A stretch of DNA of 64,000 nucleotides, from contig NIVC01003770.1 of the NCBI GenBank assembly GCA_002269645.1, positions 13,715-77,714 of the forward strand, given 5' to 3'. The notes under the pieces are model-generated. The model searched no databases. It was not told where the DNA came from and saw only the letters and a list, made by a program, of their open reading frames with translations. The position numbers and the translations under genes were made by a program. The DNA is from Macrostomum lignano. Lineage: Eukaryota. This document shows, piece by piece, positions 39,123 to 64,000 of this stretch (position 1 is the stretch's first letter; each line of letters starts with the position of its first letter).

Positions 39123-39928
39123 GTGGCTGCGGCGCCTCGCTGCCGCGCGGCCGGCAGACACCAATCAGCGGCTTCTCAACAGCCGACATCGCAGCCGCCG
39201 CGGCCGCCTCGGTGTCGGCATCAGCCACCTTGCAGGCTGGCGCAGACTCGTCGTGGACTTCATCGCCAATCTACGCCGACGTTGAATCTTCGCCGCTGAT
39301 CAGCGGCGGCGGCAGTGCCGGTCATCGACAGGATGCCGCCTTCGGCTCCCAGGGCCGTGGCATCAACGGGGCGGCCGTTGCTGTGGGAAGCAGCAGTGGT
39401 TCGTTCTTCAATCGCGACCAGCTTGGACGTCACTCGTTTCACAGCGTCCGCCAGCAGCATCAGGTGGTCAACCGAGGCGCGACCTCATCAGCCGCTGCGT
39501 CGCCCGCGATTCCTAGGCAAAATCCGCTGCATTCTCCGCCATTCGCATTCGCTCCATCATCGGATGCTGTACCAGTGCCAATCCTGCAGCTGGTGACTGA
39601 GCAGCGAGTTGAGATTGACCGGCTCAGCCAGCAGCTGCGCAATTCGCAGAGGCAGTTGAACCAACTCGTGGCGTCGCACACAGACCTGCACCGGTGCCTG
39701 AGCTCCAGGCAGCTCAACTCAGCTGTTCGGCACAGACACGAGAGCGGTCCGCAGCAGCTGACTAATGAGTACCAGCAGGACCCCAGCCAGGACCGCTCTA
39801 TTGTCGGAGGCGTCTACGGCTCCACAGATGCGCTGACGGTGGAGACAATTGACGAAGAATTTGAGGCTGATGGAACTTTGAAAACGCCGGCTCGCAAGCA
39901 GCAGCAGCAACGGCAGCAGTTGCATTAG
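39123..39928 (+). CDS. Orphan Ig-TM protein, exon 3: cytoplasmic tail with Tyr motifs and a predicted coiled coil
   Basis: Acceptor CTGCACAG|GT, phase 1. Open to TAG at 39928. Contains IYADV, EYQQ, VYGS and a heptad-like run LVTEQRVEIDRLSQQLRNSQRQLNQLVASH. Confidence 0.72.
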
Positions 39929-41690: not shown

Positions 41691-42197
41691 AGGTTGAGGT
41701 CAGAAGCTGCATGTAGTTTAATCAAATTGTTATTTTACTTTTTTGTTGGCTCCCCAACGGTGAGGCGCTGATTGCTAGTAGACAAACTCACTCCGCTAAG
41801 CTGTTAACATTCTTGGATCTCAGGCTAGTGTAAGAAAAGAATACCTATGGAAGCAAAGAGAACGGGAAACTGTGTGTGTACATAAGAAGACGCGATGGGC
41901 GTGCCTTGTGGCATGGCAGATAGCCAGGTTTCAATTCTTTTCGAAAGTTTCGCGCGACATGAGCTCAGTGCAGAGACACACAGAATTGGCAACAATGTGC
42001 AAACAATAGAAGGAAGAATGACAGAACAGCACACCAACCTCATTGCCAACCTTCTTTTTATGCATGCATCTATTTTTGCTCTACGCGAGAGACTTAGGTT
42101 GAGCTTGCTGATGAGAAGAGATACCCACACAGGAATGTCACTGAGCTCTAAAACTTTTCGTTGCAATTATTTCTCTGTAACAGACTGGGCTGCACCG

Positions 42198-46024: not shown

Positions 46025-46368
46025 TGAGAATCTCACCCCACTTATGTAGTAGTCTAGGTGAGAATCTCACCCCATTGATGCAGTCTATAGGTGAGAATCT
46101 CACCCCATTGTTGATGTAGTCTAAAAGTGAGAATCTCACCCCATCGATGTAGTAATCTAGGTAAGAATCTCACCCAATCGATGTAGTAGACTAGGTAAGA
46201 ATCTCACCCCATTGATGTAGTCTATAGGTGAGAATCTCACCCCATCGATGTAGTCTAGGTGAGACTCTCAACACATGGATGCAGTCTAGGTGAGAATCTC
46301 ACCTCATCGATGTAGTCTAGGTGAGACTCTCAACACATTGATGCAGTCTAGGTGAGAATCTCACCCTC
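46025..46368. repeat. About 31-bp array with internal palindrome GGTGAGAATCTCACC
   Basis: Direct reading. The units are tandem, with no unique spacers. Confidence 0.88.
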
Positions 46369-46484
46369 AATGTTCAGCACTATCAAGAAACTCAACGATC
46401 TTCCAAAAAATTGCACTCTGAGATAAATTAAAAACAGTAAGATAGCCGGCACACACTGGCTACACAGCTATGGCCATACGATAG

Positions 46485-46820
46485 TCAGAATAGCAAATCA
46501 GCCGAGTTGGCAGCCGACCAGGCCTCAGACGGGTCGGAGGCAAGCAGGCTGTCGTTCGCTTTTTTATCGGCAAGCGGAGGACCAGCTGAAGCGGCTGTAA
46601 CGGGCGAAGCTGCGCCAATGTTTGCGCCCCAAACAAATTTGTCGGCATTGTTGATCAAGCCTGTTTGATAGTTTGCAATGGATGCTAACGGACTGCTCAA
46701 TGGTACAGCTTCCGGCATCTGATTTGGCTGCTGCAGAGCCTGCTGTCGATGCTCAAGTATGCTCTGGTCGCTCTGGTAGACGAAAGTCTGCTCAAGAGAC
46801 GCCTCGCTAGCGAAAGCCAA
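46485..46820 (-). CDS. Phostensin/taperin-like protein, last exon
   Basis: Acceptor TTTCCCACAG|TTG. The spliced junction reads RRKK|LAFASEASLEQTFVYQSDQSIL, resembling the phostensin/taperin KISFSETALETTYQYPSESSVL region (from memory). Ends ...SADLLF*, comparable to the family's terminal ...ALYF. Confidence 0.7.
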   Translation of the reverse strand: MAFASEASLEQTFVYQSDQSILEHRQQALQQPNQMPEAVPLSSPLASIANYQTGLINNADKFVWGANIGAASPVTAASAGPPLADKKANDSLLASDPSEAWSAANSADLLF

Positions 46821-47200
46821 CTGTGGGAAAATTACTATTATTATTATGCAACGAGACGATGTACTTTAAAAAAGTACAAAAAATTGGCAAGAGTGCATTA
46901 AGCAAGCCAATTGGAATATCAGCTTTTTTAGCAAAGTAAACTTATTTGTGTGCTTGTCTTTAAGTTAAGCTGAGTTCGTTTGGTTAGTATGCATCTGGTC
47001 TGGATAGGCCTCTGTCACCTCAGACAATTACCGTGAGCAAATATGGCGAATATAAAGGTTCACCCTGCTGTGATTGAGAAGCAGCTCTGGGCTTCCGTCA
47101 AACTACAGGTCGGGAATACAGAACCACCGCACCACCCCCACAATGTCAAAAGTCCTTTCTAGTAATAAGATTTAATAATTTGATGGCTTTAACACCTCAC

Positions 47201-49483
47201 CTTCTTTCGTCTAACCTCAGCGCCAGTTACTTTAGAATGCTCCGTTGGCGTTTCTGCTTTCGCTTCGGCCAATAGACGTTGAGCCTCTTCGGCGAGCTGA
47301 GGATCTGCTCGACTATCCAAATGGCCGTGAGCCTCTGCGCTTCGAATATGATCCCAAACTGTGCTCTGGGCAAGCCAGCTGTGCTCATCAGCGGATTCGC
47401 TATCAACTTTATTCCCTAAAGAGAATAGTTGCGGCTTGTTTACTGGCGACTTAACGCACTGGCCAACTCGGACAGGCGTTACACAATCGGGTATGCCTAG
47501 CTTAACAGCTGCTTCATCCGTTGATTCAGCAAAAAAGTACCAAGACTTGCCAGCCCTTCTAATACTGGCCAACTCAGTTGAGCTTAGGGGTACTCGACGA
47601 GCCCTGCTGGTACTGTCGACTTTTGCTACTCCAGCATTACGCAGGGTAGTATCTACGCTGCTCTGTCTTTTAGACGAACTTTTAGGCGCTGTGGCATTGG
47701 TAATAGGTGGAGTTTTATTGTTTTTTTGTTGTTGAACTACCTCAATGCTACTCGGTCTCATGCCTATGCCTTTATGTACTGCGGCATCCGCTAGAAAACT
47801 TTGCTTTTCCTCGCGTTGGACAACTACTACGCTGCTTGGTCTCTTGTGGGTGTTATTAGAAGCCGGACTAGCGGCCGTCGGTTGCCTCTGAAGAGCAATG
47901 GACGACCAAGTCTTAAACTGGCCGCTACTGCCGCTGTCTTGATTAAGGTGAGATCTGGACAGCTGACTGGCAGCGGGTTTGACTGAAGCTAACGAGCCAG
48001 ACTGACGAATAGACTCTGGTCTTTTTCTCACAGGCCTAACCTGATCTTCCAACTGATATCTGCCATTGTTCTTTGTTTTAACAGGTTCAGTATAAATAAT
48101 GCTTGCTGAGCTTCTTTGTGAAACTTTGCCGTCACTCGAGTCAGAGGAAACAAAACGAATTGACGAAGACTGCCGCCTTGGATCGCTTTTCATTTCGTCT
48201 TTGATGACAGCAGCGGATACAGAGGAAACCGAAGTGGCTCTCTTCGTGTACTCTGACTTTTGAGCACTGAAATTATGCCCGGCAGGCACCGAGTGTCTTA
48301 CTGAATCTTTAGGACGAATGGAGTTGATCTGCTGTGTTTTTGAAACACTGGATCGATCAGATTTGTCAGCATAGTCGCGCCTAATGGCAGTTATACCTTT
48401 CTTGATTGAATCATCCCTGGACAAGTTAGAAGTAGCATTGCTGCTAAGCACTGACGGCTTCATTAAGTTTCTTAATGAGTCAGGAAAAGCGCCACTAGAG
48501 GAAATTTCCATCTGTCGTACAGGATCCTTGACTCCAGCTTGACTGACAGACTTTGATAATTGGCTGCTTCGATTTTCGGATGTCTGAGAACTGCCACTAG
48601 CAACATAAATCGACTGTCCGATTGTTTCTTTGGCTTGATCGAGACTTCGGGTGTCATTTGGTCCTGAATGGTTTCTTGGACTATGCGTTGCTAATTTCTT
48701 TGATTCTTCAGGGCTAGCAGTAGCTTGACTAACAATTGTAGGCTTAGCGGAACCAGTAGAATGACTAAATGAAGCTTTAGCCTGCTGCAATATTGACGGC
48801 GTAGTCGATGTCTTATTTGCGCGAATGATAGTTGGTTCGTTGCGTTGCATTATTTTTAAATCGCTCTTATTACTATTGAGATGACCTCCATCTTTATTAT
48901 CTGCTACTTTCTGGTGCTCGGTCGGATTGGCTTCAAAAATTGATCGTACATTCTGTACTATGTTTTTAATTGGAAGCGACACGTCACTGGGTATTGGCAC
49001 GAAACTCTCAGTTTGGTTAGCTTTCTTATTAGTCGCAGCTTCACTGCTCTTTGAAGCAGCGGGTGTTGTGGATATTACTGACTGTGCTGGCTGCTGAACA
49101 GGTGTGATATCTGTCTGTTTCGATTGATTTTTTGTTACTACAAGATTATGCTGCTGTTTGGCGGCCCCAGTTTGAGCAGGTGCAGACGACATTGTCGGTA
49201 GTGCAGCGGTGCCATTCTGTGAACCACAGCCAGCACCGCTCGCCTGCCCGAATCGGTTAAGCAACTGGGTGACAAATCCAGGCTGGAATGGCAACTCCGT
49301 GTCCGACTGTATGCTGTAGCTCTGGCCGCCTGGCCATGGCTGACGTTCGAGCTCTTTGGATCGTTGCAGTTGGACTTCCAGCAGCACGCGATCGATGGCC
49401 GACTGTGGGGGCGCGGTGTGACTAGCCGAGTCCATCTGGTGGAATGCTATAGAGCGTTGATCAGGTAAGCAGTCAGCCAGCAG
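47201..49483 (-). CDS. Phostensin/taperin-like protein, large low-complexity exon (first ATG at 49435)
   Basis: Acceptor ATTCTGCAG|CTG at 49483. About 760 open codons, S/T/Q/K-rich. Donor AAG AAG|GTGAGG, phase 0. Confidence 0.75.
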
Positions 49484-50639
49484 CTGCAGAATATGTGGAG
49501 ACAAAAAACTACTTACATAAACTAATAAAAATCATTTGTCTCACTTGAAACCCTAAACAAAAATACTATTTGGAGACTAAGGATTGCAACAACTTCAATA
49601 TGAAATTGATTAAAGAACCATTAACATTACTGCACCTTACTATAAATGATCCTAGTTTATCACAACATAACAACAAGTTGACTTAGTTTGCATGGGTGTG
49701 TGCACCTGAGCAAACTGGCTTTAGTGATCAGTCAAGGTGCATTCTCTTTCCTCACATTATGAGGCAATCTACATTATGAGGCTCATAAAATTGCTTGTGC
49801 TCATTCTTTGCAAGATGGGCATGTTAATTTGAAGCAGTGCCATGGTAGGCCTAACCTAGCCACAGTGATTCAAGGTAAGCATACTGCCTTCTTAGCACCA
49901 ATTTTGTTGTTTATTGATTTATTATCCTAAATTTGGATCCTGAATGCCAAATTGGCAAACACTTTTCAAGCTAGGAAGCATTTATTTTAAATCTACCTAT
50001 ACTAAATATCTTAAGTTCTATTCTATCTATGCAGCATTAGCTGCCCATGGTTGCCAGGGGTTAGCAAAATGGGCAGCAATACCTCCTCGCTGTTTCCAGA
50101 CACATAGAGCCCCTGCAGCTAAGCCAAGTAAGTCATGTATTGTATTTTCTAAAATTTATATTTTATTTAAAGTTATTTCAAAACAATTTTAATAAATATC
50201 TATTCTAGAATCAAGACAGACAAGAGTGATTAATAACTCACCTATGCTTAAAAGACTGGCATAACTAGGTTATACTTCAGGCTTTTTAAAAAATAATCAA
50301 ATATGCATACAAAATTAGATATAGATATTTAAGTCTTAGGGGGAGATAGATGCTATAATAGAATTATATTACATTAAGAACATTCCCTTTGGCTTGGCCT
50401 AGCTTTTATTATAGCCTGACTAATATATATTTATCCACTGAATAAAGCAAGTAACCTAGCACAAAATGAATACCTTATAGGATATTTATTCTAACTTTTT
50501 GTATAGTATTATCACTAGCAATGGTGTCTTATTAAACAAAAAATTAATATTACAATAGCTGGGCTTCTTGAAGTTTATGTTGATAAAATACTTCCGATTT
50601 TCCGATTTTTCTGAAACTTGTGGTGGACACTTATGGGAC

Positions 50640-50906
50640 CCCTATTGCAGCCAATGGCCATTTTCGTGGACGGCGTCCGGCGCGGATTGGCCTGGCAGCA
50701 GCGCGGCGCGCGGCGGCGGCGCGGCGCGTGGCGGCGGCGCGCGGTGGCGTGGCATGTGGCGGCGGCACGCGGCGGCATGGTGCGGGGGCATGGGAAAATT
50801 GAACCAAATCACTGATCCTGGGGACTGGCCCTGGCGCGGTACGGGTAGATGTCTGGCGCAGGAAAGGGGGGCGTCAAGCGCGGTTCAGACCTTGGCTGCA
50901 ATAGGG
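50640..50906. mobile_element. 267-bp MITE-like element with 15-bp perfect inverted ends and a CGGCG-rich core
   Basis: CCCTATTGCAGCCAA (50640-54) and TTGGCTGCAATAGGG (50892-906). No clean target-site duplication seen. Confidence 0.55.
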
Positions 50907-51009
50907 TATAGGACACCGAAAATCTCAAAAATGCAAATAAAACAGCAGAAAGTTACCTGTATGGTTGACGCAATCACAATTTACTCAATTTCTTATTCTC
51001 TTAATGAGG

Positions 51010-51375
51010 TTCTAAAACCCCCCATTCCTCCTGCCCCAGTGGTTGGTTTTAAGCTACAACCCCTTCCCCCTATTAGGATTGAAATAAATCAACACAATCT
51101 TCAATAGGTCTCCATGCCTCTATTGAAGTTTATGTTGATAAAATCAATCCTTATGAAGAATCTCCCTACCCTAAAACCCTCCATTCCCCATGCCCCGGTG
51201 GTTGGCTTTAAGCTACAACCCCCCCACTTATTAGGATTGGAATAAATCAACACAATCTTCAATAGGTCTCCATGCCTCTATTGAAGTTTATGTTGATAAA
51301 ATCAATCCTCATTAAGAATCTCCCCACCCTAAAACCCCCTATTCCTCATGCCCTGGTGGTTGGCTTTAAGCTACA
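51010..51375. repeat. About 158-bp tandem repeat, roughly 2.3 copies, each full unit holding a 52-nt hairpin
   Basis: Identical hairpins at 51088-51139 and 51246-51297. Confidence 0.88.
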
Positions 51376-54300
51376 TATAATTGGGTTAAAGCTACCAAAA
51401 AATGGAGCTCAAATTTGAAATCAGCACTATCAAAAACTCTTACAGAGATGGAATTATGATCTTATCAAAATTGCAACTATTTTATCAACATAAACTTCAA
51501 GAAGCCTCAATAGCTACATGTACTATGCATGGCATACACACTATTTTCTTAAGAGTGACGCATGCCAAGAAGGCTAATGCATGCCTAATTTTTCAGGTGT
51601 ATACTGCATTATTCAAAGTATGGACTTGCAGAAAAAAATTTGGTAATCATTGTTTAAGTGTAATCATTAGTTAGTTTATTTAAATGCAAATATATAGTCT
51701 AGACTTATACTTATAATAAGGTTCTCAAATTGCACAAATATAATATCAGTTAGTAATAACAATTGAATTAGCTAGATTAGTTATATAATCGTTAAGTTCA
51801 ATTCAAACTTATTTACTCTTTACTAAGTTTTAATTCTTGCAATTTTACTTTAATTTCACTTAAAGAGTAGACTATTTATTTATTGGATAACTAATTAGAT
51901 GATGAAGCATTTTAATTACTTAAAAATATCATAGTTACTTCCACTATTTAGCTTTTACTTTTTGCTTAGATTTGGAAACACATTTGAATAGTAGACTTAA
52001 CTTATTTGGTTTTGGATTTAGAATTTTTTGTACGTTTGGATTTGGTTTAAGAAACTTACATATAATGCAGTTGGTGTACAAATAAAATTTCCCTATTGTG
52101 CATTCTAGATTGCACTCAACATGATCTATAGTAGACAATATACTCACTTTTATACTCACCTAGTAATGTGTTACATTGTAATAACAATCATCTAGACATA
52201 AGGTTTACTTAGGCCTACAGAATAAGCCTAAAAGATTCTCAAAAGAAGTTTATATCTAGCTTCATTAATGAATAGGCCTATTCTCAACTAGTCTTAGTCT
52301 TGGGGGATTGAAAAAATGCCTTATTTGTTATTTAGTAATAATATCTATCATTCTATTGATTTCAAAATATAATAGATAATAAAATTAGGATTCCTTTTGT
52401 ATCTTACAAGATATTCTGTTGCAACAATTGGTCTTTAAATTGATGTCTATTCTTGTATTCAATAAAAATCTAGAGCTGGGTCCAAATTGGCAAATATGAT
52501 ATCAATATTAGCTTATTTTAATTGTAAGTTTATACGCTAGACTTAGGGTCCGCACCAGGTTTTTTATGCAAATAGGGTGTAATTTACTCCCTGAAATTTG
52601 GATTTGCACCCACTTTTTTGGCACTGGATGCAACTGCAGCAACTCGTGCATCTGCATTTTTTGAGATCAAGATGCATGCAAGTCATTTTTTAGCAAAAGT
52701 TACATACAAAACATCATGCATAGATATATTGTTTCAACACTTTCAAATATTCATTAAATACATACTTTCCCTAAATTTCTACTTGTTTTTCTTCTATAAT
52801 TAAAAATGCATTGAAATAAAATTTTATAAGAATAGGCATGTCGTTGTCATCAATTCTAATTAATTATTCATCCCAACAAAATTGGCAAATTTAAACCTAG
52901 ATGCAAGTTCCTAGTTTTCACATTTGCATCCATTTTTTAAGCTTGAGATGCAAGCTTGCATCCACATTTTTGGCAGAAAAAAACCTGGTCCGCGCCGGCG
53001 GCGCCCGCACTACGTGTACGCTGCCGGTGGTTCTCCATCATTTAAATTTGCCGCTGGAAATTACAGGAATGTTTAGGTCTATTCAAACAAAGTTGACGAA
53101 AACTGCGGCTGCTGAGTTTCTTAGCCTCAATGGCGGGGTAGTTTTGGTTGTACCTGGGCAGTCGAAATAAAGAAATTTCTCAGAATGACTTGCAGATCGG
53201 TTGTACAAAAGCTGACCGGGGTGATTCAAGCTCGTCTTCAAATGCATTGAAATTTAACTTGTACTTTTTCGCTAATATATTTTGCACCGTACTCGTATAT
53301 ACTATTAGTAGTATTCTGCTGCCACACCGTGGAATAGCGCAATTTACCCTCAGAACTCTTCCTTAGTTAGATCACTTAATTGGGTCTTAATCATTACGAT
53401 CTCCGAGAGTCAAAAAATTTAATTTTAAAGGCAGCCTTAACTAGCACTGGTGGGAAGCTGTTAAGTTACGAAGCATATTTTTCTGATCAATCTTTAATGC
53501 TTGTCACAAAAGCGAAACTGAATAAATACTAATGACGTAACTAGCTCGTAATCAACCGCTAAATATGCATGATAGTTATTGGTCGGGATTTGAAAAGTTT
53601 GTGATTACAATTTAGGGGGCCTTTCTAGTTTTGGAAATTTCAAAAGAATTAGGGAGTATGCTTCACTGGCAGAGATTCCTACTTCACTGATTCCTACTTC
53701 ACTGGCAGATAGATGGCCATGAGCTACCGGGTGATGAAACAGAGACACCGAGTGGAAGCGGTCGAGCTGTGGGAGCCGCAAAATTATACTGAATGGAAAT
53801 AATTAAGGGCGTAAGAGATATACAGCTGTACGAGTATACGCACGATCCAGTAAGCCAATAGCTGTAGATGTATGTAAACATAATCACAGGTAGCTAGGTA
53901 GTAGACGAGTTAGAATAATGAAGTGACTAATTACTGCTCGTAGTGCATGTAACAAAAAATCCGCAAAAATCTAAAACCGCATTCAATATTCGCATCGATA
54001 AAAACTGAACCAAGTTGATTTCGCACACTTGACTACAATGGACATGTACAGTGTACACTCATATTCATGTACATGCATACGGTGCCCTAAAATTCTAAAC
54101 GCTTACCCTATGATTTTCTGCAGATGTCATTTTTACATGTAAGTGCTTACAGTTCATCCAAAATTACATCAAATTTTAATATTTCTCTTACATATAGACG
54201 TAACGGACTTGACCATGAGCCTGCGTTTTAAATATTAATGTCCGAATTGTATGTGTTCCTCATGCCTTATAAAATTGAATGAGGAATTTGCATTTGCATG

Positions 54301-54871
54301 CATCTCACCGCTTTTGTTCGTCAGAGTTGATTGCTCGATTGATGGGCAATTTGAATTGACACAAGTCTTACATTTACAATGTACATTCTTTGGTTGGGGA
54401 GCACGGAGATTACCCTCCTCAGATTTGCCCCCCCTCAATGCTTAGTACTTTTTAAAATCAGAGAATTAATTAGGGGACAAAGCGACATGGCATCTGCATG
54501 AATTAATAGCTCACCGATGTACCCTTGCATGCATATTTTGATCGGGTAAATCTCTTTATTAAGACCTACTAAACATTGGGGGGGGGGGGCGGCAATGCAG
54601 ATAAAATCTGCCGCAGGAAAAAAGCTTATTAAGTTTGGCGGGTAAATCTCCTGCGGCCAAATCTTGACGGGCAGTTCGCCTACGGGCAATTCTCATGGAC
54701 CCTTTTGGTTGATGCGTGTACATTTGTACATTTGGGACAAATACTTAAACAAAGACAATGTAGTTTCAACTTAGTTTCCATTCTGACTTGAGTTAAGTCG
54801 GTCATGGAATTATTTTTTCCGGGTCAGCCTTTCTAAACAATTTTCAAAAATTAGATATGAATCCACCGTTT

Positions 54872-56845
54872 CTAACTAAGGTGCTCGCGCTGGATTCGCT
54901 TCACTTGGGCAATTGTGGACCCGGGTTTGTCCGGAATATCCCGGTAGGGCGGATCCTGGGTTCCGTGGATGACCAGCGTCCAGTCCGTAATCAGTCCGTG
55001 TTGCGTGTAATTTGCTGAACTGGCACTCATTTCTGCACGCAAGGTCCACTGGCCTGCCGCGGACTCGCCCCACATGTGTGTAGTCATAAATGGCCAGTCG
55101 GTGAATCCTTTCTTTGAGTCACTATCCATAGGTCGCCTCCCCAACAGCATTGATGTTGTATTGCTTGGTGACGTCAAGAACAAGAGGACGTCACCTCGAC
55201 GACTTGCTCGCAGCGTGACAAAAGCCTGGACGTGCTCGATGAATCTTACTCTCGACTTTGAATCGAAATCGCAACCGTTTGAGTCAATAGTCAGTTCCAC
55301 CTCTTGGCGAACGTCAAAGTAGACTGGTTGAGCCACCCGGCCCGCGGTGCATTCAAACCGTTTAGGCAATGGGCGCCAAATTTGGGCCATCTCGACCATT
55401 GCACCGGCGTCCAGCACCCCAAAGCCGTACAAATGGTGGAACTTCAGCCCAGCTGCGTTGCGCTCCCACTTGTGTCCACGGCTTTCATCCTGCAGGCCTC
55501 TCTTTTGAGAGGTGAGCACCACCAGGTGTTGCATGTCTCGCCACGTCAGCCGAGGATTCGCCTCCAACGCCAGGGCGAACACTCCCGCTGCCTCAGGGGC
55601 AGCCGCACTGGTCCCAGAATGGTAGAGGGTGCAAAAGCCGTACAGATCTACGGTAGCTACGCCAGCATCAAGGCCCGCCCCTCGACCGGTAGAAAACGTC
55701 GATGCCAGAGTCGACGAGCAAGACTCGCCATAGGTTGCCGGACTGCCATCATTAGTAACTGAGTTGATGCTGATTGTCCACATGCTCCCCGTGTAGCCAT
55801 CGCAGTTGCAATCGTCCTTTGGGCCGCCATTGCCGCTGGCCCACACAAATATGCTTCCAAGGCCGCCGCGTCCGAGAGTGATTCCGTCCCTCAGGACGCG
55901 GGATGTCTCTTTGAGAGGCCCATCAAGGGTCTTTCCATCATCGGTGGGGCCCCAGCTGGCCGAGTAAATATCGATAATGTCCCTTCGGTGAGACATGGCA
56001 GCCGCTTCTAGCAGGTCGGTGATGTAGAGCTGGTCCAGAATGCGCAGGCCGGCTACTCGGCTTCCGGGAGCCACGCCGACACTACAGATGCGATTGTTAC
56101 GTTTAGCCGACACCTCACCGGCGCAACGAGTGCCGTGGCTGTTGAACCGATAGTCTGCATACTTCGGAAAAGGATAAGGATCGTTGCTATTGAAATCGAA
56201 GCTGGCTTCAGCGTTGTAGCTTTCGGCCAGGTCAGGGTGCAAGTAGTCAATCCCGTCGTCCACGATAGCGACGGTTACGTTGCGGCCGATGTAGCCCGCC
56301 TCCCAGACTGGCAGGACGTTCAAGTCGAGGCCAGGTGTACCCCAGGATTGTCCAGTATTCTTGAGAAACCACGCTTTTTCGAATAGTGGATCATTCGGAT
56401 CCGGGAGCTGCTGCTCTGTTCTGTTGGTAGACCCGCCCATTGTTGCTGTTGTATTATTCCTCCCATTGGGATTTGAAACAGCAATGTTTTTCACCTTAGA
56501 ACTGCTTGCACGAAAGCCGCGCTTGTTCCGACGGAATCCCTGCTGCTGAGTGGCACTCTTCACGTCGGGATGCTGAGCGATGGCGTTGATGATGTCATCT
56601 CTGGCATTGCTGTCCGCTTCCGGTATATCATCGTGTACAGCATGGAACTCCAGATCTTCTCCCAGGTGCCGGCGCACCAGCTGCAGACCGTTAATGTCGG
56701 CAGTCACTCGCCTTGCAGCCGCCTCGCCATCGGGGTCGCCGGCGCTTGTCTTCACAACCAAGTGGATGTCTTTGGTGTAGACGGCACTGTTTGCTCGAAC
56801 TGCAGTTGTGCCAACAACAAGAAGGCACAAGCAGAGGCGTAGCAT
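54872..56845 (-). CDS. PCSK2: Prohormone (neuroendocrine) convertase 2-like subtilisin-type protease, 657 aa, intronless CDS
   Basis: Signal peptide; pro-domain ending RRNKR|GFR. Triad D196 (VDDGIDYLHPDL), H237 (FNSHGTRCAGE), S413 (HSGTSAAAPEAAGV). PC2-specific blocks SMWTISINS, ESCSSTLASTFS, GVLDAGAMV; P-domain RRGD. All catalytic positions are offset by +29 from human PC2 numbering. Confidence 0.93.
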   Translation of the reverse strand: MLRLCLCLLVVGTTAVRANSAVYTKDIHLVVKTSAGDPDGEAAARRVTADINGLQLVRRHLGEDLEFHAVHDDIPEADSNARDDIINAIAQHPDVKSATQQQGFRRNKRGFRASSSKVKNIAVSNPNGRNNTTATMGGSTNRTEQQLPDPNDPLFEKAWFLKNTGQSWGTPGLDLNVLPVWEAGYIGRNVTVAIVDDGIDYLHPDLAESYNAEASFDFNSNDPYPFPKYADYRFNSHGTRCAGEVSAKRNNRICSVGVAPGSRVAGLRILDQLYITDLLEAAAMSHRRDIIDIYSASWGPTDDGKTLDGPLKETSRVLRDGITLGRGGLGSIFVWASGNGGPKDDCNCDGYTGSMWTISINSVTNDGSPATYGESCSSTLASTFSTGRGAGLDAGVATVDLYGFCTLYHSGTSAAAPEAAGVFALALEANPRLTWRDMQHLVVLTSQKRGLQDESRGHKWERNAAGLKFHHLYGFGVLDAGAMVEMAQIWRPLPKRFECTAGRVAQPVYFDVRQEVELTIDSNGCDFDSKSRVRFIEHVQAFVTLRASRRGDVLLFLTSPSNTTSMLLGRRPMDSDSKKGFTDWPFMTTHMWGESAAGQWTLRAEMSASSANYTQHGLITDWTLVIHGTQDPPYRDIPDKPGSTIAQVKRIQREHLS

Positions 56846-58757
56846 TGGATTATTGTACTACTGGATTACCAGGTAGGGATTAGCGTTTTGTAGCACCTGA
56901 TTTAGAATTTTTACTTCAGATCTTTGACAATCAATTTCATACAGCCAAAGCAAGTTGTGTTCCCGCTGTTGCTCTCATAATCTACTAGTTTCTTGCCATA
57001 TTATGCAAAAGCTAAAATTTCCGAAATTCAATTTCATTCACATTCCAGAGGAACAGTTTTGAGTGGAAGCAGAAATTCATGTTCGCATTCGAAGCAAATT
57101 CTGTTAGCGTTTTTTCTCGTAAAATAATCCCAGCGGTTCACCTCTTTCCGCCTCGAACGATAATTTTAGCTACTGATCGTGGATTTCGATTTTTTTACAA
57201 TAAGCCTAGATTTTTCGGCAGCTAACAGTCAGGAAATTGTGAAATCGAATCGAATCATAGTTTGCTACACCCTAAGCGAAGAATGCTTGCAAGCAGGCCA
57301 TGTCCATATCAGACCCCCCTTCAGAATGACAGCTGCAAACCAGACAGCTTCGATGCAAAGAAAAAAACGAAACAAAAATGAACGGATAAAATTGTAAATT
57401 ACTTTTGGGGTCTGGCTGTCTGGCTGTCTGCAGGCTGTGGCCTGGTGCTACAGAGGGTAGCAATCTGTAGAGCAAGTGAGGGGGGCGCATGCAGTCGCGC
57501 CCTAAACCATCTGCTCTTCAAATTTTTCTCATGCCCGTAGTCTCAGACTCGGTGCTCAAACGACTAAAAAAATCCATTGAGCAGGCCTTGCTGCTGCAAA
57601 AACCGAGGAGTCTCAGGGCCCCCCTCCCCCTACCGCGGTTCACCTGGAGCCCATTGTCTGTGTGCTCAGCGGGGGGCGGGTGTCTGCAAGTGCTGCCAAG
57701 TATTTTGGTTGGGGTGGAGTGCATCGCTTCTGCGCTGCTGTCGCTTCTGCCAGGGGGGGGGGGGGCTTCTTCTATTGACAATTGGGCCTCGCATTATTTG
57801 ACACAGAGCCACACTGCAGAAGGACTGGGGGTTCCAGACGAAGCTGAACTGAGAAAATAGGCTTGAGCATGGAGTTCTAGAACTTACACCCGGAGTCGCA
57901 GGATTAGAAAATGGTAATAATTTTTTGTTTTAATAACTTTTTGTCTAGAATAGGATTCTGAGGCTCGAACATCGACACTTTAAAAGCAGCTTTAGCCTTT
58001 AAGACAGGCGTTGGCAAACCCCTCGTCCTCGGGTCCTTTGAAACTTCATCATTGCAATCCGGCCCGCTCAAGGCTTGTGTCTCATCCCAGCTTTCTTCTC
58101 TCTAATCTCCTCTCTTTTCTCTTTTCTCTCCTCTTGTCTCCCTTTTAGTTAGCGATAAGTTGAGTGTATACTGAAAAACCTCAGCCTCTCAATAAGCCAC
58201 TCCGAGCTTTGGTTTCAGATCTCCATGGCTCGAGTTGTGCATGAGTCATTGCAGCAAACAAAAGTGGTTGCTCGGACAACTGCATGGTCTCTCTCTCTCT
58301 CTCTCCACAGTTCACACACCTCTCTTCTGAGCCTCTGTGTCGCATCTCTTAACTAGCCCCCCCCCACCCTCCACTTGGCAACCAGTTCGGCCATAAAACC
58401 TTGGACAATTCTTCTCTTTCTTACTGTCTTCTCTCCAACTGCTTGGCCTTGGCTTAGCAGAGTCGTTCTGAGAGCAGTTCTAAACTACTGGGAAGTTTCG
58501 AAAGTCCAGAGCGGAGTGACAATCTGGTGTATGGCGACCTCAGCTTGATAAGCTAACAAACTAGCCATGACTAGATTGCTACTTCTCACTGGCTATCGAT
58601 CGGTCATCGCTGTCGGATAGTTGTCATGTGCACGTGTGATTTACAATAGCGTTCGAGTCTGAACCTCCAGTACTGACTCGTGTTCTTAACGTGTTTATTT
58701 GACTCTTGGTTCGTTGAAGTTTTAGTGCCTGTGCGAAATAGGTTGAGGAGAGCGGCA

Positions 58758-60210
58758 CTTACAGGTGTTTCATGTGCATTGAGGACACGGGAGCTTACAG
58801 GTGTTTCATTGAGGACACGGGAGCTTACAGGTGTTTCATGTGCATTGAGGACACGGGAACTTACAGGTGTTTCATTGAGGACACGGGAACTTACAGGTGT
58901 TTCATGTGCATTGAGGACACAGGAACTTACAGGTGTTTCATGTGCATTGAGGACACAGGAACTTACAGGTGTTTCATGTGCATTGAGGACACAGGAACTT
59001 ACAGGTGTTTCATGTGCATTGAGGACACAGGAACTTACAGGTGTTTCATTGAGGACACGGGAACTTACAGGTGTTTCATTGAGGACACGGGAACTTACAG
59101 GTGTTTCATTGAGGACACGGGAACTTACAGGTGTTTCATTGAGGACACGGGAACTTACAGGTGTTTCATGTGCATTGAGGACACAGGAACTTACAGGTGT
59201 TTCATTGAGGACACGGGAGCTTACAGGTGTTTCATTGAGGACACGGGAGCTTACAGGTGTTTCATTGAGGACACGGGAACTTACAGGTGTTTCATTGAGG
59301 ACACGGGAACTTACAGGTGTTTCATGTGCATTGAGGACACAGGAACTTACAGGTGTTTCATTGAGGACACGGGAACTTACAGGTGTTTCATTGAGGACAC
59401 GGGAGCTTACAGGTGTTTCATTGAGGACACGGGAGCTTACAGGTGTTTCATGTGCATTGAGGACACAGGAACTTACAGGTGTTTCATTGAGGACACGGGA
59501 ACTTACAGGTGTTTCATTGAGGACACGGGAACTTACAGGTGTTTCATTGAGGACACGGGAACTTACAGGTGTTTCATGTGCATTGAGGACACAGGAACTT
59601 ACAGGTGTTTCATGTGCATTGAGGACACAGGAACTTACAGGTGTTTCATGTGCATTGAGGACACAGGAACTTACAGGTGTTTCATTGAGGACACGGGAAC
59701 TTACAGGTGTTTCATTGAGGACACGGGAACTTACAGGTGTTTCATGTGCATTGAGGACACAGGAACTTACAGGTGTTTCATGTGCATTGAGGACACAGGA
59801 ACTTACAGGTGTTTCATGTGCATTGAGGACACAGGAACTTACAGGTGTTTCATGTGCATTGAGGACACAGGAACTTACAGGTGTTTCATGTGCATTGAGG
59901 ACACAGGAACTTACAGGTGTTTCATGTGCATTGAGGACACAGGAACTTACAGGTGTTTCATGTGCATTGAGGACACAGGAACTTACAGGTGTTTCATGTG
60001 CATTGAGGACACAGGAACTTACAGGTGTTTCATTGAGGACACGGGAACTTACAGGTGTTTCATTGAGGACACGGGAACTTACAGGTGTTTCATGTGCATT
60101 GAGGACACAGGAACTTACAGGTGTTTCATTGAGGACACGGGAGCTTACAGGTGTTTCATTGAGGACACGGGAACTTACAGGTGTTTCATGTGCATTGAGG
60201 ACACGGGAAA
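58758..60210. repeat. Minisatellite of interspersed 29-bp and 35-bp units (GGAACTTACAGGTGTTTCAT[GTGCAT]TGAGGACAC)n
   Basis: Direct reading. Confidence 0.97.
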
Positions 60211-60971
60211 TTACACTTAGATGCTTTGAGTATTAAGGGCAGGAGCACTTGCCAGGTGTGCAGAATGAGGAAAGAACTATTTTTTAACTTTCCGCACAAA
60301 GTATACTGTACAATGAAAATTAATAAATCAGCTATAAAGTTTACATGTAATAAATATGATTGATAAAGAATGAGCTCTGAGAACTACTTAATCTAATGGT
60401 TAATGTACGAGAACTCTTACATGTACAAATAAATGACGGAGAGACCTATACTGGTCACTTTCATGGACATATAAATGGAGCAGTTTAGAACAGTCATGTC
60501 AGTATATATTTAATCCAAGACATATATAGTGGTATGCAACACTCAGGTTCAATGCATCAAAAGCATCAGAAAAGCAAAATAATATTTGAAGCAGTTATAC
60601 TACTGGCCCGAGCTCCTCCTTGTCATGCATTGTTGATAATATTACAACAAAGGTCACACTACAAAGGGATTAAACTCTTTGCTCAGAGATTCCCTTGAAT
60701 TACAAATTTGCTCAGTTGCACAAAAAATTTCGTTTTAGCGCTTCCTTTTTCCTACTGTAAGTAGAAACATGCGATTTTTTCAACTAAGAATGTGCCATTT
60801 CTACAAAGCCTGGGGCGCTTGTTGCAATCGAATTTTTTCCCCTAATAAACTTTGGTTCGAAGAGTAGAACAGATGTGTCATGCTTACATAAGAAGCCGGT
60901 CAAGACAAAAAGCACAACTGGTTTTAACAAAGGTCAAAGGTCACGATTTGGTGGGGAGTCGTCGGGAGGAC

Positions 60972-61506
60972 TTATACAAAGTTCACGGATACCAAATTAG
61001 TCTTGTCGCCCGCCTGCTGCCCGCGCTGCTGCCGTCTCAGCAGGCGCTTCCTCTGGTGCCTCGGCGCCCAGCGCCCGATGCAGGAGGCCAAGTCGTCGTC
61101 TGTGGTGGCGCCGGCGCGCTCCTCCGCCAGCTGCTGCGCCCGCTCCCTCAGCAGGCGAGCTCTGACCGGCCGTCTGGTCACGTAGCGGCTGCCGTCAGCT
61201 CGGCGCTTCACCACCCACTCCATTGCCGATGCTTCACCACCTGCGGCAGCTGCCGGCTCTTCTGGCAGTGCCGCTGCCGCTGCTGCCGAATGCTCTTGAA
61301 GCTGATGCTGCTGCTCCGGTTGTTGCTGCGGCTCTTCTTCGATTGTCTGGCAGCGGTGCGGCTGCGGCTGCGGCTGTTGGAGCAACTTCGGCGGCGGCGG
61401 CGCCTGCTGCAGGCTGAGCAGATTTGTCTGCGGGTTCAGAGTCAGCTGGGTACCGCCGCGGATGCGGGTGCCCATCCTTGGCACGTTTGGTCTCTGCTGC
61501 TGCAGT

Positions 61507-61544
<38 letters not shown>

Positions 61545-61985
61545 CATCTGCGGATGCTGCTGGAACGATGCCAGGAGAGCAGCGGCCAGCTCCTCCACTT
61601 CTTGCTCTGAGCTCTGAGTGCTGCTCACTCCAGAATCCTGATGAGCTTCCTCCTCTTCTTCATCCTCTTGTTCTACGGCGTCGTCGTGGCGACCCTCCTC
61701 GGCCTCGGCAGCGGACATTTCGAGCAGTTCGACGTGCAAATCGTCGAGACCGCTGCCGGCTCCCCCGCCGCCGCCGAGGTGTCGGTCGCTGGCCGACGAA
61801 GACGGCGGAGTTGCCGACAAGGCCAGCTGGACGGCCCGGGCGATCAGCAGCGTCACGGAGGTCTCGGCCGAGCCGAACAGCCGGACGGCCTGCTCCCGGC
61901 TGCGCACCGCGGCGCCGTTGACGCGAAGGATCTGGTCGCCTTCGCGGATCCGACCGCACCTGCCGGCTATGCTGCCCGGTTCCAC
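60972..61985 (-). CDS. PDZRN3/PDZRN4/PDZD4-family protein, last exon
   Basis: Acceptor AATCCGCAG|GTG. VEPGSIAGRCGRIREGDQILRVNG completes the PDZ domain. WVVKRRADGSRYVTRRPVRARLLRERAQQLAEERAGATTDDD is the family's conserved C-terminal block. Ends LVSVNFV*. Confidence 0.88.
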
Positions 61986-62064
61986 CTGCGGATTGGGGGG
62001 CATCGGAAGCGGCTTTGATTTGAATTGGTCGGATTTGAAGGGTACCCTCGTGTTATCTGAGTTG

Positions 62065-62395
62065 TTAGGGGTTGAAGGGAGCGGGGTTGAAGGATCGGGG
62101 TTGAAGGGATCGGGGTTGAAGGGATCGGGGTTGAAGGGATCGGGTTGAAGGGATCGGGGTTGAAGGGATCGGGGTTGAAGGGATCGGAGTTGAAGGGATC
62201 GGGGTTGAAAGGATCGGGGTTGAAGGGATCGGGGTTGAAGGGAGCGGGGTTGAAGGGATTGGGATTGAAGGGATTGGGATTGAAGGGATTGGGGGTTGAA
62301 GGATCGGGGTTGAAGGGATTGGGATTGAAGGGATTGGGGGTTGAAGGGATTGGGATTGAAGGGATTGGGGGTTGAAGGGATTGGGTTGATTGGGT
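62065..62395. repeat. 15-bp G-rich minisatellite (GGGGTTGAAGGGATC)n filling a PDZ-gene intron
   Basis: Direct reading. Confidence 0.93.
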
Positions 62396-62513
62396 TGTTG
62401 GGAAGATTTTAGAAGTGTTCGAAAAAGTTTGGGTTCAAGTTTAAGGGTTGCAGTATTGAAGATCAAGTTGTACTAAATAGGCAAATGTCAGCACAAAGCA
62501 ACCGGGAACCAAC

Positions 62514-62624
62514 CTCTCCAACAAACACGTCTGTGGCCATGTCGGGGCTGCCGCTGTCGGCGCAGCTGTAGCAGAGGGTGAGACCCAGCTTCTCCCTCGC
62601 TGAGCTCCGGTGCAGCGTCACCTC
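62514..62624 (-). CDS. PDZRN3/PDZRN4/PDZD4 (Slip1-like) family protein: exon encoding the first half of a PDZ domain
   Basis: Acceptor TTCCCACAG|GAG. Reads EVTLHRSSAREKLGLTLCY...DVFVGE. Donor GAG|GTTGGT, phase 0. Upstream exons lie beyond the right edge. Confidence 0.85.
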
Positions 62625-62664
62625 CTGTGGGAAGGAAGACGCGGTTTGGTCTGCATATGGGGTC

Positions 62665-64000
62665 AGTTTATTCATCTACAGACCCATCTATGGCATCAAT
62701 TTATCCATCTACAGATCCATCGATGGCATCAGTTTGTTCATCTACAGATCCATCGATGGCATCAGTTAATTCATCTACAGACCCATCTATGGCATCAGTT
62801 TATCCATCTACAGACCCATCGATGGCATCAGTTTGTTCATCTTTAGATCCATCTATGGCATCAGTTTATCCATCTACAGATCCATCGATGGCATCAGTTT
62901 CCATCTACAGACCATCGATGGCATCAGTTTGTTCATCTTTAGATCCATCTATGGCATCAGTTTGTTCATCTTTAGATCCATCTATGGCATCAGTTCATTC
63001 ATCTACAGAGCCATCTATGGCATCAGTTTGTTCATCTACAGATCCATCTATGGCATCAGTTTGTTCATCTACAGATCCATCTATGGCATCAGTTTGTTCA
63101 TCTTTAGATCCATCTATGGCATCAGTTCATTCATCTACAGAGCCATCTATGGCATCAGTTTGTTCATCTACAGATCCATCTATGGCATCAGTTTGTTCAT
63201 CTACAGATCCATCTATGGCATCAGTTAATTCATCTACAGACCCATCTATGGCATCAGTTCATTCATCTACAGACCCATCTATATGGCATCAGTTTATCCA
63301 TCTACAGACTCATCTATGGCATCAGTTCATTCATCTACAGACCCATCGATGGCATCAATTCATTCATCTACAGACCCATCTATATGGCATCAGTTTGTTC
63401 ATCTACAGACCCATCTATGGCATCAGTTTGTTCATCTACAGATCCATCGATAGCATCAGTTTGTTCATCTACAGATCCATCGATGGCATCAGTTTGTTCA
63501 TCTACAGATCCATCTATGGCATCAGTTTGTTCATCTACAGATCCATCGATGGCATCAGTTTGTTCATCTACAGATCCATCGATGGCATCAGTTTGTTCAT
63601 CTACAGATCCATCGATAGCATCAGTTTGTTCATCTACAGATCCATCGATGGCATCAGTTTGTTCATCTACAGACCCATCTATATGGCATCAGTTCATTCA
63701 TCTACAGACCCATCTATATGGCATCAGTTCATTCATCTACAGACCCATCTATATGGCATCAGTTCATTCATCTACAGACCCATCTATATGGCATCAGTTC
63801 ATTCATCTACAGACCCATCGATGGCATCAGTTTGTTCATCTACAGACCCATCTATATGGCATCAGTTCATTCATCTACAGACCCATCTATATGGCATCAG
63901 TTCATTCATCTACAGACCCATCTATATGGCATCAGTTCATTCATCTACAGACCCATCTATATGGCATCAGTTCATTCATCTACAGACCCATCTATATGCA
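62665..64000. repeat. 33/35-bp minisatellite (CATCTATGGCATCAGTTTGTTCATCTACAGATC)n, running off the window edge
   Basis: Direct reading. Confidence 0.96.

What the first reader, a model, noticed from the sequence alone, without database searches (positions are those of the whole stretch)
55829..55831. PC2-type convertase with Asn instead of the PC2-defining oxyanion-hole Asp
The protein is collinear with human PC2 (D167/H208/D310/S384 correspond to D196/H237/N339/S413) and has PC2-specific sequence throughout. The oxyanion position, however, is AAT = Asn (WASGNGG), not the Asp (WASGDGG) that distinguishes PC2 from furin, PC1/3 and the other kexin-like convertases. That Asp has been linked to PC2's late, acidic-compartment activation and to its interaction with the 7B2 chaperone. 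A natural Asn variant could be a neofunctionalised PC2 paralogue with different pH optimum or 7B2 dependence (inference).
Basis: partly seen in the sequence, partly recalled or inferred. Interest (0 to 1): 0.7.

Follow-up and report, generated by a model that had tools for sequence, protein, structure and literature searches.

The report
Flatworm PC2 duplicate with Asn oxyanion hole
A flatworm (Macrostomum lignano) carries, besides its normal hormone-processing protease PC2, a fast-evolving extra copy in which the one residue that defines PC2 in every other animal sampled (an Asp in the active site) has gone back to the Asn used by all related proteases, which makes it a natural experiment on why PC2 is different.

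Summary
Window 55829-55831 reads AAT (Asn339, WASGNGG) on the minus strand. It lies in an intact, intronless 657-codon ORF (54872-56845) encoding a complete kexin-like convertase with the triad D196/H237/S413.

- **Source.** The window is Macrostomum lignano contig NIVC01003770.1. A second syntenic locus and an older gene model also carry Asn, so a sequencing error is very unlikely.
- **Rarity.** Of the convertases retrieved, 180 have Asp, 177 of them with PC2 motifs. The only Asn proteins with PC2 motifs are models of this gene.
- **Placement.** The clade PC2 + query has 99-100% NJ bootstrap. NJ puts the query basal to all PC2, but likelihood placement puts it inside flatworm PC2s. With the prodomain included, it is sister to the worm's canonical Asp-bearing PC2 (RELL 0.91).
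- **Published work.** That canonical copy, not this gene, is the published neuronal, RNAi-lethal "PC2".
- **Constraint.** The gene keeps 85/85 universally conserved convertase positions. It has lost 14 of 29 PC2-only signature residues, two of them in the DQPFMTD loop.

Most likely it is an active convertase freed from PC2-specific constraints, possibly 7B2 dependence; that part is inferred. Expression and biochemistry are untested. It is a new variant of a known kind, of moderate interest.

The parts
54872..56845 (-). Intronless CDS (657 codons plus stop) of the Asn-type PC2 paralogue (public name BOX15_Mlig006099g2-like)
   Evidence: ORF list. Pfam finds S8 pro-domain, Peptidase_S8 and P_proprotein. 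The exact protein is on record on M. lignano contig NIVC01003770.1.
56786..56845 (-). Predicted signal peptide (about residues 1-20, MLRLCLCLLVVGTTAVRANS)
   Evidence: Read from the translation. The hydrophobic core LCLCLLVVG is visible. No predictor was run, so this is an inference.
56519..56785 (-). Prodomain (about residues 21-109), ending in the primary cleavage motif RRNKR109|G. It carries the motif LVRRHLG-D-EFH-VHD--PEADS, shared only with the worm's canonical PC2.
   Evidence: Pfam S8_pro-domain covers residues 39-109. Prodomain identity is 49% to P0004 against 21-37% to 23 other PC2s.
55418..56287 (-). Subtilase catalytic domain (residues 187-476)
   Evidence: Pfam PF00082, E=1e-49. 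Aligned to furin crystal-structure sequences at E=3e-136.
56258..56260 (-). Catalytic Asp196
   Evidence: Aligns with furin D153.
56135..56137 (-). Catalytic His237
56015..56035 (-). Loop 271-277, DQLYITD. It is the counterpart of the PC2 loop DQPFMTD (mammalian residues 242-248). Two residues invariant in PC2 are replaced (P to L, M to I).
   Evidence: The one-residue length difference from furin is kept.
55829..55831 (-). Oxyanion-hole codon AAT = Asn339. Every other PC2 sampled has Asp; the canonical M. lignano paralogue has GAC.
55607..55609 (-). Catalytic Ser413
54971..55240 (-). P (homo-B) domain, residues 536-625, preceded by a retained RGD (residues 550-552, window 55190-55198)
   Evidence: Pfam PF01483, E=2e-20. 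RGD read from the alignment.
54555..54560 (-). AATAAA about 310 nt downstream of the stop codon; a possible polyadenylation signal, unverified
   Evidence: Read from the sequence.

Best explanation
The gene encodes a complete secretory kexin-like proprotein convertase that descends from PC2 (PCSK2). It arose by duplication of an already intronless PC2 gene in the Macrostomum lineage. Its sister is the worm's canonical, Asp-bearing, neuron-expressed PC2. After the duplication this copy evolved about 2-3 times faster. It kept every position that all convertases share, but it lost about half of the positions that only PC2s share. Among these, the oxyanion-hole Asp reverted to the ancestral Asn; the sister's codon is GAC and this gene's is AAT. 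Shown here: the codon, the domain structure, the descent from PC2, the uniqueness of Asn among sampled PC2s, and the selective loss of PC2-only residues. Inferred: it is an active, basic-residue-specific endoprotease with a canonical Asn oxyanion hole. Its folding and activation would then no longer follow the PC2-specific programme, meaning 7B2 chaperone binding and late, acidic-compartment autoactivation, and it would behave more like PC1/3 or furin in maturation.
For: Identity and integrity: the domain set is complete, the triad is intact, and 85/85 sites conserved in at least 95% of 243 convertases are retained. The ORF is intact at two loci, with 9 synonymous and 8 non-synonymous differences and dN/dS about 0.28; the coding region is 99.1% identical against 97-98.5% in unique flanks.

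PC2 descent: PC2 representatives score 690-742 bits, against at most 511 bits for any single-domain non-PC2 convertase. {PC2 + query} has 99-100% NJ bootstrap. ML placement on 38 taxa puts the six best positions inside flatworm PC2s. With the full length including the prodomain, the query is sister to M. lignano PC2 with RELL 0.91, and the next placement is 12.9 lnL worse. Prodomain identity to that paralogue is 49%, against 21-37% to the others. Both paralogues are intronless, whereas the Opisthorchis PC2 gene spans 6.4 kb.

Release from PC2-specific constraint: 14 of 29 PC2-only signature sites are lost, against 14 of 206 other PC2-invariant sites (Fisher p=1e-7). The canonical paralogue loses only 3 of 235. 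The lost sites include P to L and M to I in the DQPFMTD loop.

Non-redundancy: the published neuronal, RNAi-lethal M. lignano PC2 (RNA815_2403.2) is the canonical paralogue. Its 687-bp probe shares at most 14 nt of exact match with this gene.

Literature: PC2 is the exception with Asp, and Asp to Asn in mammalian PC2 leaves activity measurable (PMC4182778). The Asp is linked to 7B2 interaction (PMC7144994).
Against: There is no evidence of transcription or protein for this copy. No transcript-derived protein matching it was found, although the same is true of the demonstrably expressed canonical paralogue, so that absence says little. GC3 is lower than in the canonical copy (0.61 against 0.80), which could mean low expression. 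The dN/dS estimate rests on only 17 differences. NJ puts the gene basal to all PC2s (52-90% bootstrap), and the ML preference over that position (24.7 lnL) is not significant by a KH-type test on the catalytic and P domains alone (z=1.35, RELL 0.05). The likelihood code and its BLOSUM62-derived rate matrix are my own, not a standard package. Published D-to-N mutants of mammalian PC2 keep their activity (cited in PMC4182778), so the Asn alone may be nearly neutral. The role of the 242-248 loop in 7B2 binding is recalled from the literature (Apletalina et al. 2000, J Biol Chem), not verified here.
Confidence: 0.55

Rival explanations
1. Relaxed-constraint duplicate. The copy is a redundant or narrowly expressed PC2 duplicate drifting under weakened selection. 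Asp to Asn is an incidental, nearly neutral change, and there is no new maturation mechanism or change in 7B2 relationship.
For: The branch is 2-3 times longer than that of other flatworm PC2s (pendant 0.44-0.68 against 0.1-0.36). Eleven of the 14 lost signature residues changed to residues that are not the outgroup consensus. GC3 is lower. Mammalian PC2 D-to-N keeps activity (PMC4182778). No orthologue was found elsewhere.
Against: The losses are not random. 85/85 universal sites are kept, and losses are 12.8-fold enriched (odds ratio) at PC2-only positions (p=1e-7). Both loci keep a 657-codon ORF with dN/dS about 0.28. Enrichment at PC2-only sites is what release from one specific constraint predicts, rather than general decay.
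Confidence: 0.28
2. Ancient relic. The gene is the sole survivor of a lineage that split from the PC2 stem before the Asn-to-Asp switch, so its Asn is ancestral and not a reversion.
For: NJ trees place it as sister to all Asp-bearing PC2s (90% bootstrap with Kimura distances, 84% and 52% with gamma 1.0 and 0.6). ML cannot formally reject this position on the catalytic and P domains (RELL 0.05, z=1.35). It lacks half of the PC2 signature residues.
Against: NJ support falls as the rate correction gets stronger, which is the pattern of long-branch attraction. ML prefers positions inside flatworms by 24.7 lnL. With the prodomain included, the best placement outside flatworms is 35.8 lnL worse, at RELL 0.002. 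The prodomain motif is shared only with the M. lignano canonical PC2, and both paralogues are intronless. Most lost signature residues are not in the outgroup state (11 of 14). It would also require loss of this lineage in every other animal group sampled.
Confidence: 0.07
3. Short gene conversion from a furin- or PC1-like gene replaced the oxyanion segment. The 17 residues GRGGLGSIFVWASGNGG are identical to furin.
For: The stretch GRGGLGSIFVWASGNGG equals the furin sequence in the PDB alignment. Residues 333, 339 and 352 are in the non-PC2 state.
Against: Non-PC2-like residues are scattered along the whole protein, not clustered. F333 and P342 are shared with the canonical M. lignano PC2. Residues 345, 355 and 356, next to the segment, are PC2-type, and L329 is the commonest PC2 residue. 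The M. lignano furin genes were not available for a nucleotide-level comparison.
Confidence: 0.05
4. Sequencing or assembly artefact at the codon.
For: Nothing specific. The genome is repeat-rich and was assembled from long reads.
Against: The same AAT is present at two loci that differ at 18 other coding nucleotides, and in an older assembly's model. The Asn comes with dozens of other lineage-specific substitutions.
Confidence: 0.01

Closest known systems
Canonical PC2 / PCSK2 (neuroendocrine convertase 2), e.g. M. lignano BOX15_Mlig001076g2 (= transcript RNA815_2403.2), Smed-pc2, mammalian PCSK2
   Same: The domain order, length and triad spacing are the same (+29 offset to mammalian PC2). 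It shares the PC2 motifs DDGIDY, MWTISINS and SAAAPEAAG, the one-residue-longer 242-248 loop, RGD in the P domain and a short C-tail. It is 57% identical to the M. lignano paralogue and 50-55% to other PC2s, and it sits in the PC2 clade by NJ and ML.
   Different: The oxyanion hole is Asn, not Asp. Fourteen of 29 PC2-only signature residues are changed, including P244L and M246I (mammalian numbering), T201A, W204R, R282L and N294T. The branch is 2-3 times longer. It is not the gene behind the published neuronal expression and RNAi lethality.
Engineered PC2 oxyanion-hole mutants (Asp310Asn) studied in mammalian cells: Zhou, Paquet & Mains 1995; Benjannet et al. 1995; Scougall et al. 1998, as cited in PMC4182778 and PMC7144994
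   Same: The same single-residue state (Asn) sits in a PC2 scaffold.
   Different: Those are point mutants in an otherwise native PC2. Here the Asn is natural and is accompanied by dozens of other substitutions concentrated at PC2-only positions. No biochemical data exist for this protein.
Furin, PC1/3 and other Asn-type kexin-like convertases (S8B)
   Same: It has the Asn oxyanion hole. The segment GRGGLGSIFVWASGNGG is identical to furin. All 85 universally conserved positions are kept.
   Different: Scores to these are far lower (at most 511 bits against 690-742 for PC2s). At 50 columns that discriminate PC2 from the rest, the query is PC2-like at 33, other-like at 9 and neither at 8. It has no Cys-rich or transmembrane C-terminal region.

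Membership tests
Kexin-like proprotein convertases (MEROPS S8B) | Prodomain, subtilase catalytic domain and P/homo-B domain, in that order | tested here: met
   Pfam PF16470 (39-109), PF00082 (187-476) and PF01483 (536-625), all above the gathering cut-offs.
Kexin-like proprotein convertases (MEROPS S8B) | Asp/His/Ser triad and Asn oxyanion hole, in register with furin and kexin | tested here: met
   D196, H237, N339 and S413 align with the furin catalytic residues at E=3e-136.
Kexin-like proprotein convertases (MEROPS S8B) | Dibasic autocleavage site at the end of the prodomain | tested here: met
   RRNKR109|GF aligns with the R-x-K-R|G site of 24 PC2s.
PC2 / PCSK2 (neuroendocrine convertase 2) | Phylogenetic position inside the PC2 clade | tested here: met
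   {PC2 + query} has 99-100% NJ bootstrap. ML places it inside flatworm PC2s, sister to M. lignano PC2 at RELL 0.91. Caveat: NJ puts it basal to crown PC2, and ML does not formally reject that on the catalytic and P domains alone.
PC2 / PCSK2 (neuroendocrine convertase 2) | Asp in place of Asn at the oxyanion hole (the textbook hallmark) | tested here: not met
   AAT = Asn339. All 180 other Asp-type sequences versus this gene. It is therefore PC2-derived by descent but is not a biochemically canonical PC2.
PC2 / PCSK2 (neuroendocrine convertase 2) | PC2-only signature residues (at least 95% in 118 PC2s, at most 10% in 125 other convertases) | tested here: inconclusive
   15 of 29 are kept and 14 lost. 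The canonical M. lignano PC2 keeps essentially all of them.
PC2 / PCSK2 (neuroendocrine convertase 2) | DQPFMTD loop (residues 242-248) with a one-residue insertion relative to furin | tested here: inconclusive
   The length is kept, but the sequence is DQLYITD; the invariant Pro and Met are replaced.
PC2 / PCSK2 (neuroendocrine convertase 2) | Dependence on the 7B2 chaperone, with late acidic autoactivation | not testable with these tools
   This needs expression with and without 7B2. A preprint reports pc2+/7b2+ peptidergic neurons in its three flatworm atlases, which include M. lignano (PMC11398382), so a 7B2 partner apparently exists in the species.
PC2 / PCSK2 (neuroendocrine convertase 2) | Neuronal or neuroendocrine expression | not testable with these tools
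   Published ISH and RNAi concern the other paralogue. No gene-specific data were found for this one.

The most novel reading that the evidence does not exclude
This would be a natural PC2 that has escaped the 7B2 chaperone system. After duplication, one copy reverted the oxyanion Asp and remodelled the PC2-only surface (the DQPFMTD loop, the segment before the catalytic His, R282 and others), so that it matures on its own as PC1/3 or furin does. The 14 changed signature positions would then be an evolutionary map of the residues that make PC2 depend on 7B2 and on acidic pH. That bears on a question open since the 1990s, for which no PC2 sequence was found among the solved PDB structures.
Probability: 0.3. 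Interest if true: 0.65.

Novelty: new variant of a known kind. Interest (0 to 1): 0.45.

Why it matters
PC2 is the only kexin-like convertase with Asp in the oxyanion hole. In the sample examined here, the association between PC2 sequence type and Asp is otherwise perfect. Why PC2 uses Asp is still argued, with late acidic activation and 7B2 binding as the main candidates, and so far it has been approached only with point mutants.

This gene offers a natural revertant in a tractable laboratory flatworm with transgenesis and RNAi, sitting next to its canonical sister gene. The set of co-changed PC2-only residues is a ready list of candidate positions for 7B2 dependence.

If the Asn turns out to be incidental, the gene is still a clean example of a fast-evolving duplicate that sheds subfamily-specific constraints while keeping the core ones. 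It also warns that 'neuroendocrine convertase 2' annotations in M. lignano cover two non-equivalent genes.

Tried and rejected
1. The NJ placement as sister to all PC2s is treated as probable long-branch attraction. Its support drops from 90% to 52% with stronger gamma correction, and likelihood placement contradicts it. It is kept as a 7% rival.

2. Gene conversion from a furin-like gene around codon 339: the per-column comparison shows no localised non-PC2 tract. M. lignano furin genes could not be fetched for a nucleotide test.

3. A search for orthologues or transcript fragments with a 312-aa query (residues 109-420) found nothing above 71% identity. This absence is weak evidence, because no other Macrostomum PC2 is in the database either.

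4. An exact-protein look-up found only the NCBI genome contig for this gene, and the same was true of the expressed canonical paralogue. It says nothing about expression.

5. Literature:
   - The gene ID Mlig006099 occurs in no held paper.
   - The PC2-promoter transgenic paper gives no gene ID and has no held supplements.
   - The primary papers on PC2 D310N and the 242-248 loop are not in the library. Those points rest on secondary citations or on my own recollection, and are marked as such.

6. The 'shared loss of the internal prodomain RxKR site' was considered as a synapomorphy with the canonical paralogue and dropped, because most neodermatan PC2s also lack that site.

7. Structure prediction was not run. 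The tools return no coordinates, so the spatial clustering of the changed residues could not be measured.
Full report
**1. The observation**

On the plus strand, positions 55829-55831 read 'att'. The minus strand therefore reads AAT, inside gtg tgg gcc agc ggc AAT ggc ggc = VWASGNGG. The codon is residue 339 of a 657-codon ATG-to-stop ORF at 54872..56845 on the minus strand, with no interruption.

Pfam finds an S8 pro-domain (39-109), a Peptidase_S8 domain (187-476) and a P_proprotein domain (536-625), all above their curated cut-offs. The best solved relatives are furin (E=3e-136 over residues 149-630) and kexin. No PC2 sequence appears among the PDB hits. In that alignment Asn339 lies opposite the furin oxyanion Asn.

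D196, H237 and S413 are in place.

**2. Where the window comes from, and whether the codon is real**

The exact protein is on record on Macrostomum lignano assembly GCA_002269645.1, contig NIVC01003770.1. A second locus on NIVC01000309.1 (protein P0002, BOX15_Mlig006099g2) is syntenic over at least 18 kb.
- Unique flanks are 97-98.5% identical.
- The protein is 99% identical (649/657).
- There are 9 synonymous and 8 non-synonymous codon differences, giving dN/dS of about 0.28.
- Codon 339 is AAT there too.

An older UniProt model (A0A1I8GAG1, P0001) is a frameshifted fusion of tandem partial copies, but it also reads WASGNGG. A base-calling error is therefore very unlikely, although raw reads were not examined.

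**3. How unusual the Asn is**

In the first search, all hits from the fourth onward were PC2s named as such by their sources or unnamed proteins with PC2 motifs. They were 50-57% identical and came from flatworms, molluscs, annelids, a nemertean, arthropods, a crinoid and vertebrates. Of the first 120 hits, 117 read WASGDGG. The three that read WASGNGG are the two models of this gene and one two-domain furin.

A second search with residues 109-420 added 55 further Asp-bearing cluster representatives (54 with PC2 motifs), and none with Asn. Over everything fetched:

| Oxyanion residue | PC2 motifs | Sequences |
|---|---|---|
| Asp | at least 2 | 177 |
| Asp | fewer than 2 | 3 |
| Asn | fewer than 2 | 179 |
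| Asn | at least 2 | 2 (both are models of this gene) |

The literature held here agrees that PC2 is the exception among eukaryotic subtilases (PMC4182778) and that the Asp is conserved in invertebrate PC2s (PMC7144994). I found no paper describing a natural Asn-type PC2.

**4. Is it a PC2?**

*Scores.* An exhaustive HMMER search of 1.84 billion representatives gave 690-742 bits to full-length PC2 representatives. Any single-domain non-PC2 convertase scored at most 511 bits.

*NJ tree.* I aligned the catalytic and P domains of 245 sequences (435 columns). The outgroups are named by their sources as PACE4, PC1/3 and a schistosome furin-1. The clade {all Asp-type PC2 + query} has 99-100% bootstrap. 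Within it, however, the query is sister to all Asp-bearing PC2s, at 90% with Kimura distances, 84% with gamma 1.0 and 52% with gamma 0.6. Support that falls as the rate correction gets stronger suggests long-branch attraction.

*Likelihood placement.* No ML program was installed. I wrote a likelihood routine with a reversible rate matrix derived from BLOSUM62, 4-category gamma rates and Felsenstein pruning. I then placed the query on every branch of an ML-optimised 38-taxon backbone.
- The six best placements are all inside Platyhelminthes and lie within about 5 lnL of each other.
- The placement on the PC2 stem ranks 18th. It is 24.7 lnL worse after full optimisation, with RELL 0.05 and a KH-type z of 1.35. 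It is disfavoured but not formally rejected.

*Adding the prodomain.* With 25 PC2s and 617 columns, the query is sister to the M. lignano canonical PC2 (P0004) with RELL 0.91. The next placement is 12.9 lnL worse, and the best placement outside flatworms is 35.8 lnL worse.

*Independent characters agree.*
- Prodomain identity is 49% to P0004, against 21-37% to 23 other PC2s.
- The motif LVRRHLG-D-EFH-VHD--PEADS is seen only in these two proteins.
- Both genes are intronless, whereas the Opisthorchis PC2 gene spans 6.4 kb for 654 codons.

I conclude that this is a duplicate of PC2 that arose in the Macrostomum lineage, and that its Asn is a reversion. The sister gene's codon is GAC.

**5. What changed besides the Asn**

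The query matches the consensus at all 85 positions conserved in at least 95% of 243 convertases, so the core protease is under full constraint.

Of 235 positions conserved in at least 95% of PC2s, it has changed 28; the canonical M. lignano PC2 has changed 3. The changes are concentrated at PC2-only positions, defined as at least 95% in PC2 and at most 10% in other convertases. Fourteen of 29 such positions are lost, against 14 of 206 other PC2-invariant positions (odds ratio 12.8, Fisher p=1e-7). Three went to the outgroup consensus (S219N, N323T, D339N) and eleven went to other residues.

The lost positions, with mammalian PC2 numbering in brackets, include:
- P273L and M275I in the loop DQPFMTD (242-248); the loop keeps its PC2 length
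- T230A and W233R, just before the catalytic His
- R311L
- D373G
- N386T
- R448K, N449R and H498E

From memory, not verified here: the 242-248 loop and the oxyanion Asp are among the PC2 residues reported to be needed for 7B2 binding (Apletalina et al. 2000; Benjannet et al. 1995, 1998).

Residues in the non-PC2 state are scattered along the protein, so there is no sign of a conversion tract around codon 339.

**6. Relation to the published M. lignano PC2**

Arbore et al. 2015 (PMC4490696) described transcript RNA815_2403.2 as a PC2 homologue expressed in the nervous system, whose RNAi stops growth and kills the worms. The transcript sequence in their supplement translates to the N-terminus of P0004. 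Both primers of their 687-bp amplicon lie in the P0004 gene, neither is in this gene, and the longest exact match to this gene is 14 nt.

The characterised gene is therefore the Asp-type paralogue, and this copy does not compensate for its loss. A preprint reports pc2+/7b2+ peptidergic neurons in its three flatworm atlases, M. lignano among them, so a 7B2 partner apparently exists in the species (PMC11398382). For this copy I found no expression data. Database absence says little, because the expressed paralogue is equally absent from the transcript-derived sets.

**7. Most likely mechanism**

*Shown:* an intact, constrained convertase gene derived from PC2, with a canonical Asn oxyanion hole and a selectively eroded PC2-specific signature.

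*Inferred:* it cleaves after basic residues like its relatives. Its maturation may have become independent of the PC2-specific programme of 7B2 binding in the ER and slow autoactivation in acidic granules.

*Cautions:*
- Published Asp-to-Asn mutants of mammalian PC2 keep their activity (cited in PMC4182778), so the Asn alone may do little.
- GC3 is lower than in the canonical copy (0.61 against 0.80).
- The dN/dS value rests on only 17 differences.

The rivals are a drifting duplicate with an incidental Asn, an ancient pre-PC2 relic, local gene conversion and an artefact. Each is weighed in its own section.

**8. Comparison, novelty and verdict**

By descent the gene belongs to the PC2 clade. 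By the textbook biochemical hallmark (Asp) it fails, so I file it as a member of the kexin-like convertases (S8B) and as a PC2-derived, Asn-type variant, not as a canonical PC2.

I found no description of such a natural variant. Public records call it a 'hypothetical protein' or, automatically, 'Neuroendocrine convertase 2'. It is a new variant of a known kind.

Interest is moderate (0.45). The exception to an otherwise perfect rule is real and lies in a tractable model organism, and the co-changed residues make the old question of why PC2 has Asp more testable. On the other side, the functional consequence is unproven, prior point mutants suggest it may be mild, and expression is not shown.

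Noticed in passing
window 1-64000 (e.g. 4538-5618, 15817-16752, 20823-22464, 24696-26569, 58743-60215, 62656-63995): The window is extremely rich in tandem repeats. About 30 distinct arrays with periods of 4-158 bp cover roughly 20 kb, about a third of the window. Many of the longest ORFs (e.g. 24627-26699, 58680-60236) are simply these arrays read through and are not genes.
   Followed up: partly
window 7717-8691 (+): A 324-aa ORF has a partial mariner-type transposase DDE domain (PF01359, E=1e-8) and an HTH_32 match below its cut-off. It is probably a transposon remnant.
   Followed up: partly
window 46485-49483 (-), ORF 47189-49504: The neighbouring annotated gene has an 872-aa product in the public record and a 771-aa ORF here. 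It has no Pfam match, so its function is unknown. ORFs at 41895-43445 and 39053-39928 also have no Pfam match.
   Followed up: partly
window 46025-63995 versus L002 (NIVC01000309.1): The whole neighbourhood is present twice in the assembly. Unique DNA is 97-98.5% identical and the repeat arrays 88-91%. These may be alleles or recent whole-genome-duplication homeologues. The convertase CDS is better conserved (99.1%) than its flanks.
   Followed up: partly
L001 6001-7905 and window 54872-56845; L004 1001-7405: Both M. lignano PC2 paralogues are intronless, while the Opisthorchis viverrini PC2 gene spans 6.4 kb for a 654-aa product. Introns were therefore lost, or the gene arose as a retrogene, before the duplication. 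I did not test whether this is general intron poverty in M. lignano.
   Followed up: partly
P0001 (UniProt A0A1I8GAG1, M. lignano): This 854-aa public model is a fusion of one nearly complete and one partial copy of this gene, with frameshifted stretches. It is a gene-model or assembly artefact, or a sign of tandem copies in another assembly.
   Followed up: no
P0005 / L005 (Logan run DRR639838; also a marine metatranscriptome member, ERR1719229): This is an Asp-type PC2 from an unidentified organism that groups with free-living flatworm PC2s (83% identical to M. lignano PC2 in the catalytic domain). Unlike most flatworm PC2s, it keeps an internal RMRRS site in the prodomain.
   Followed up: no
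window 54577-54590 (-), 3' of the stop codon: A run of about 14 C lies in the putative 3' UTR, about 20 nt upstream of an AATAAA at 54555-54560. Its significance is unknown.
   Followed up: no
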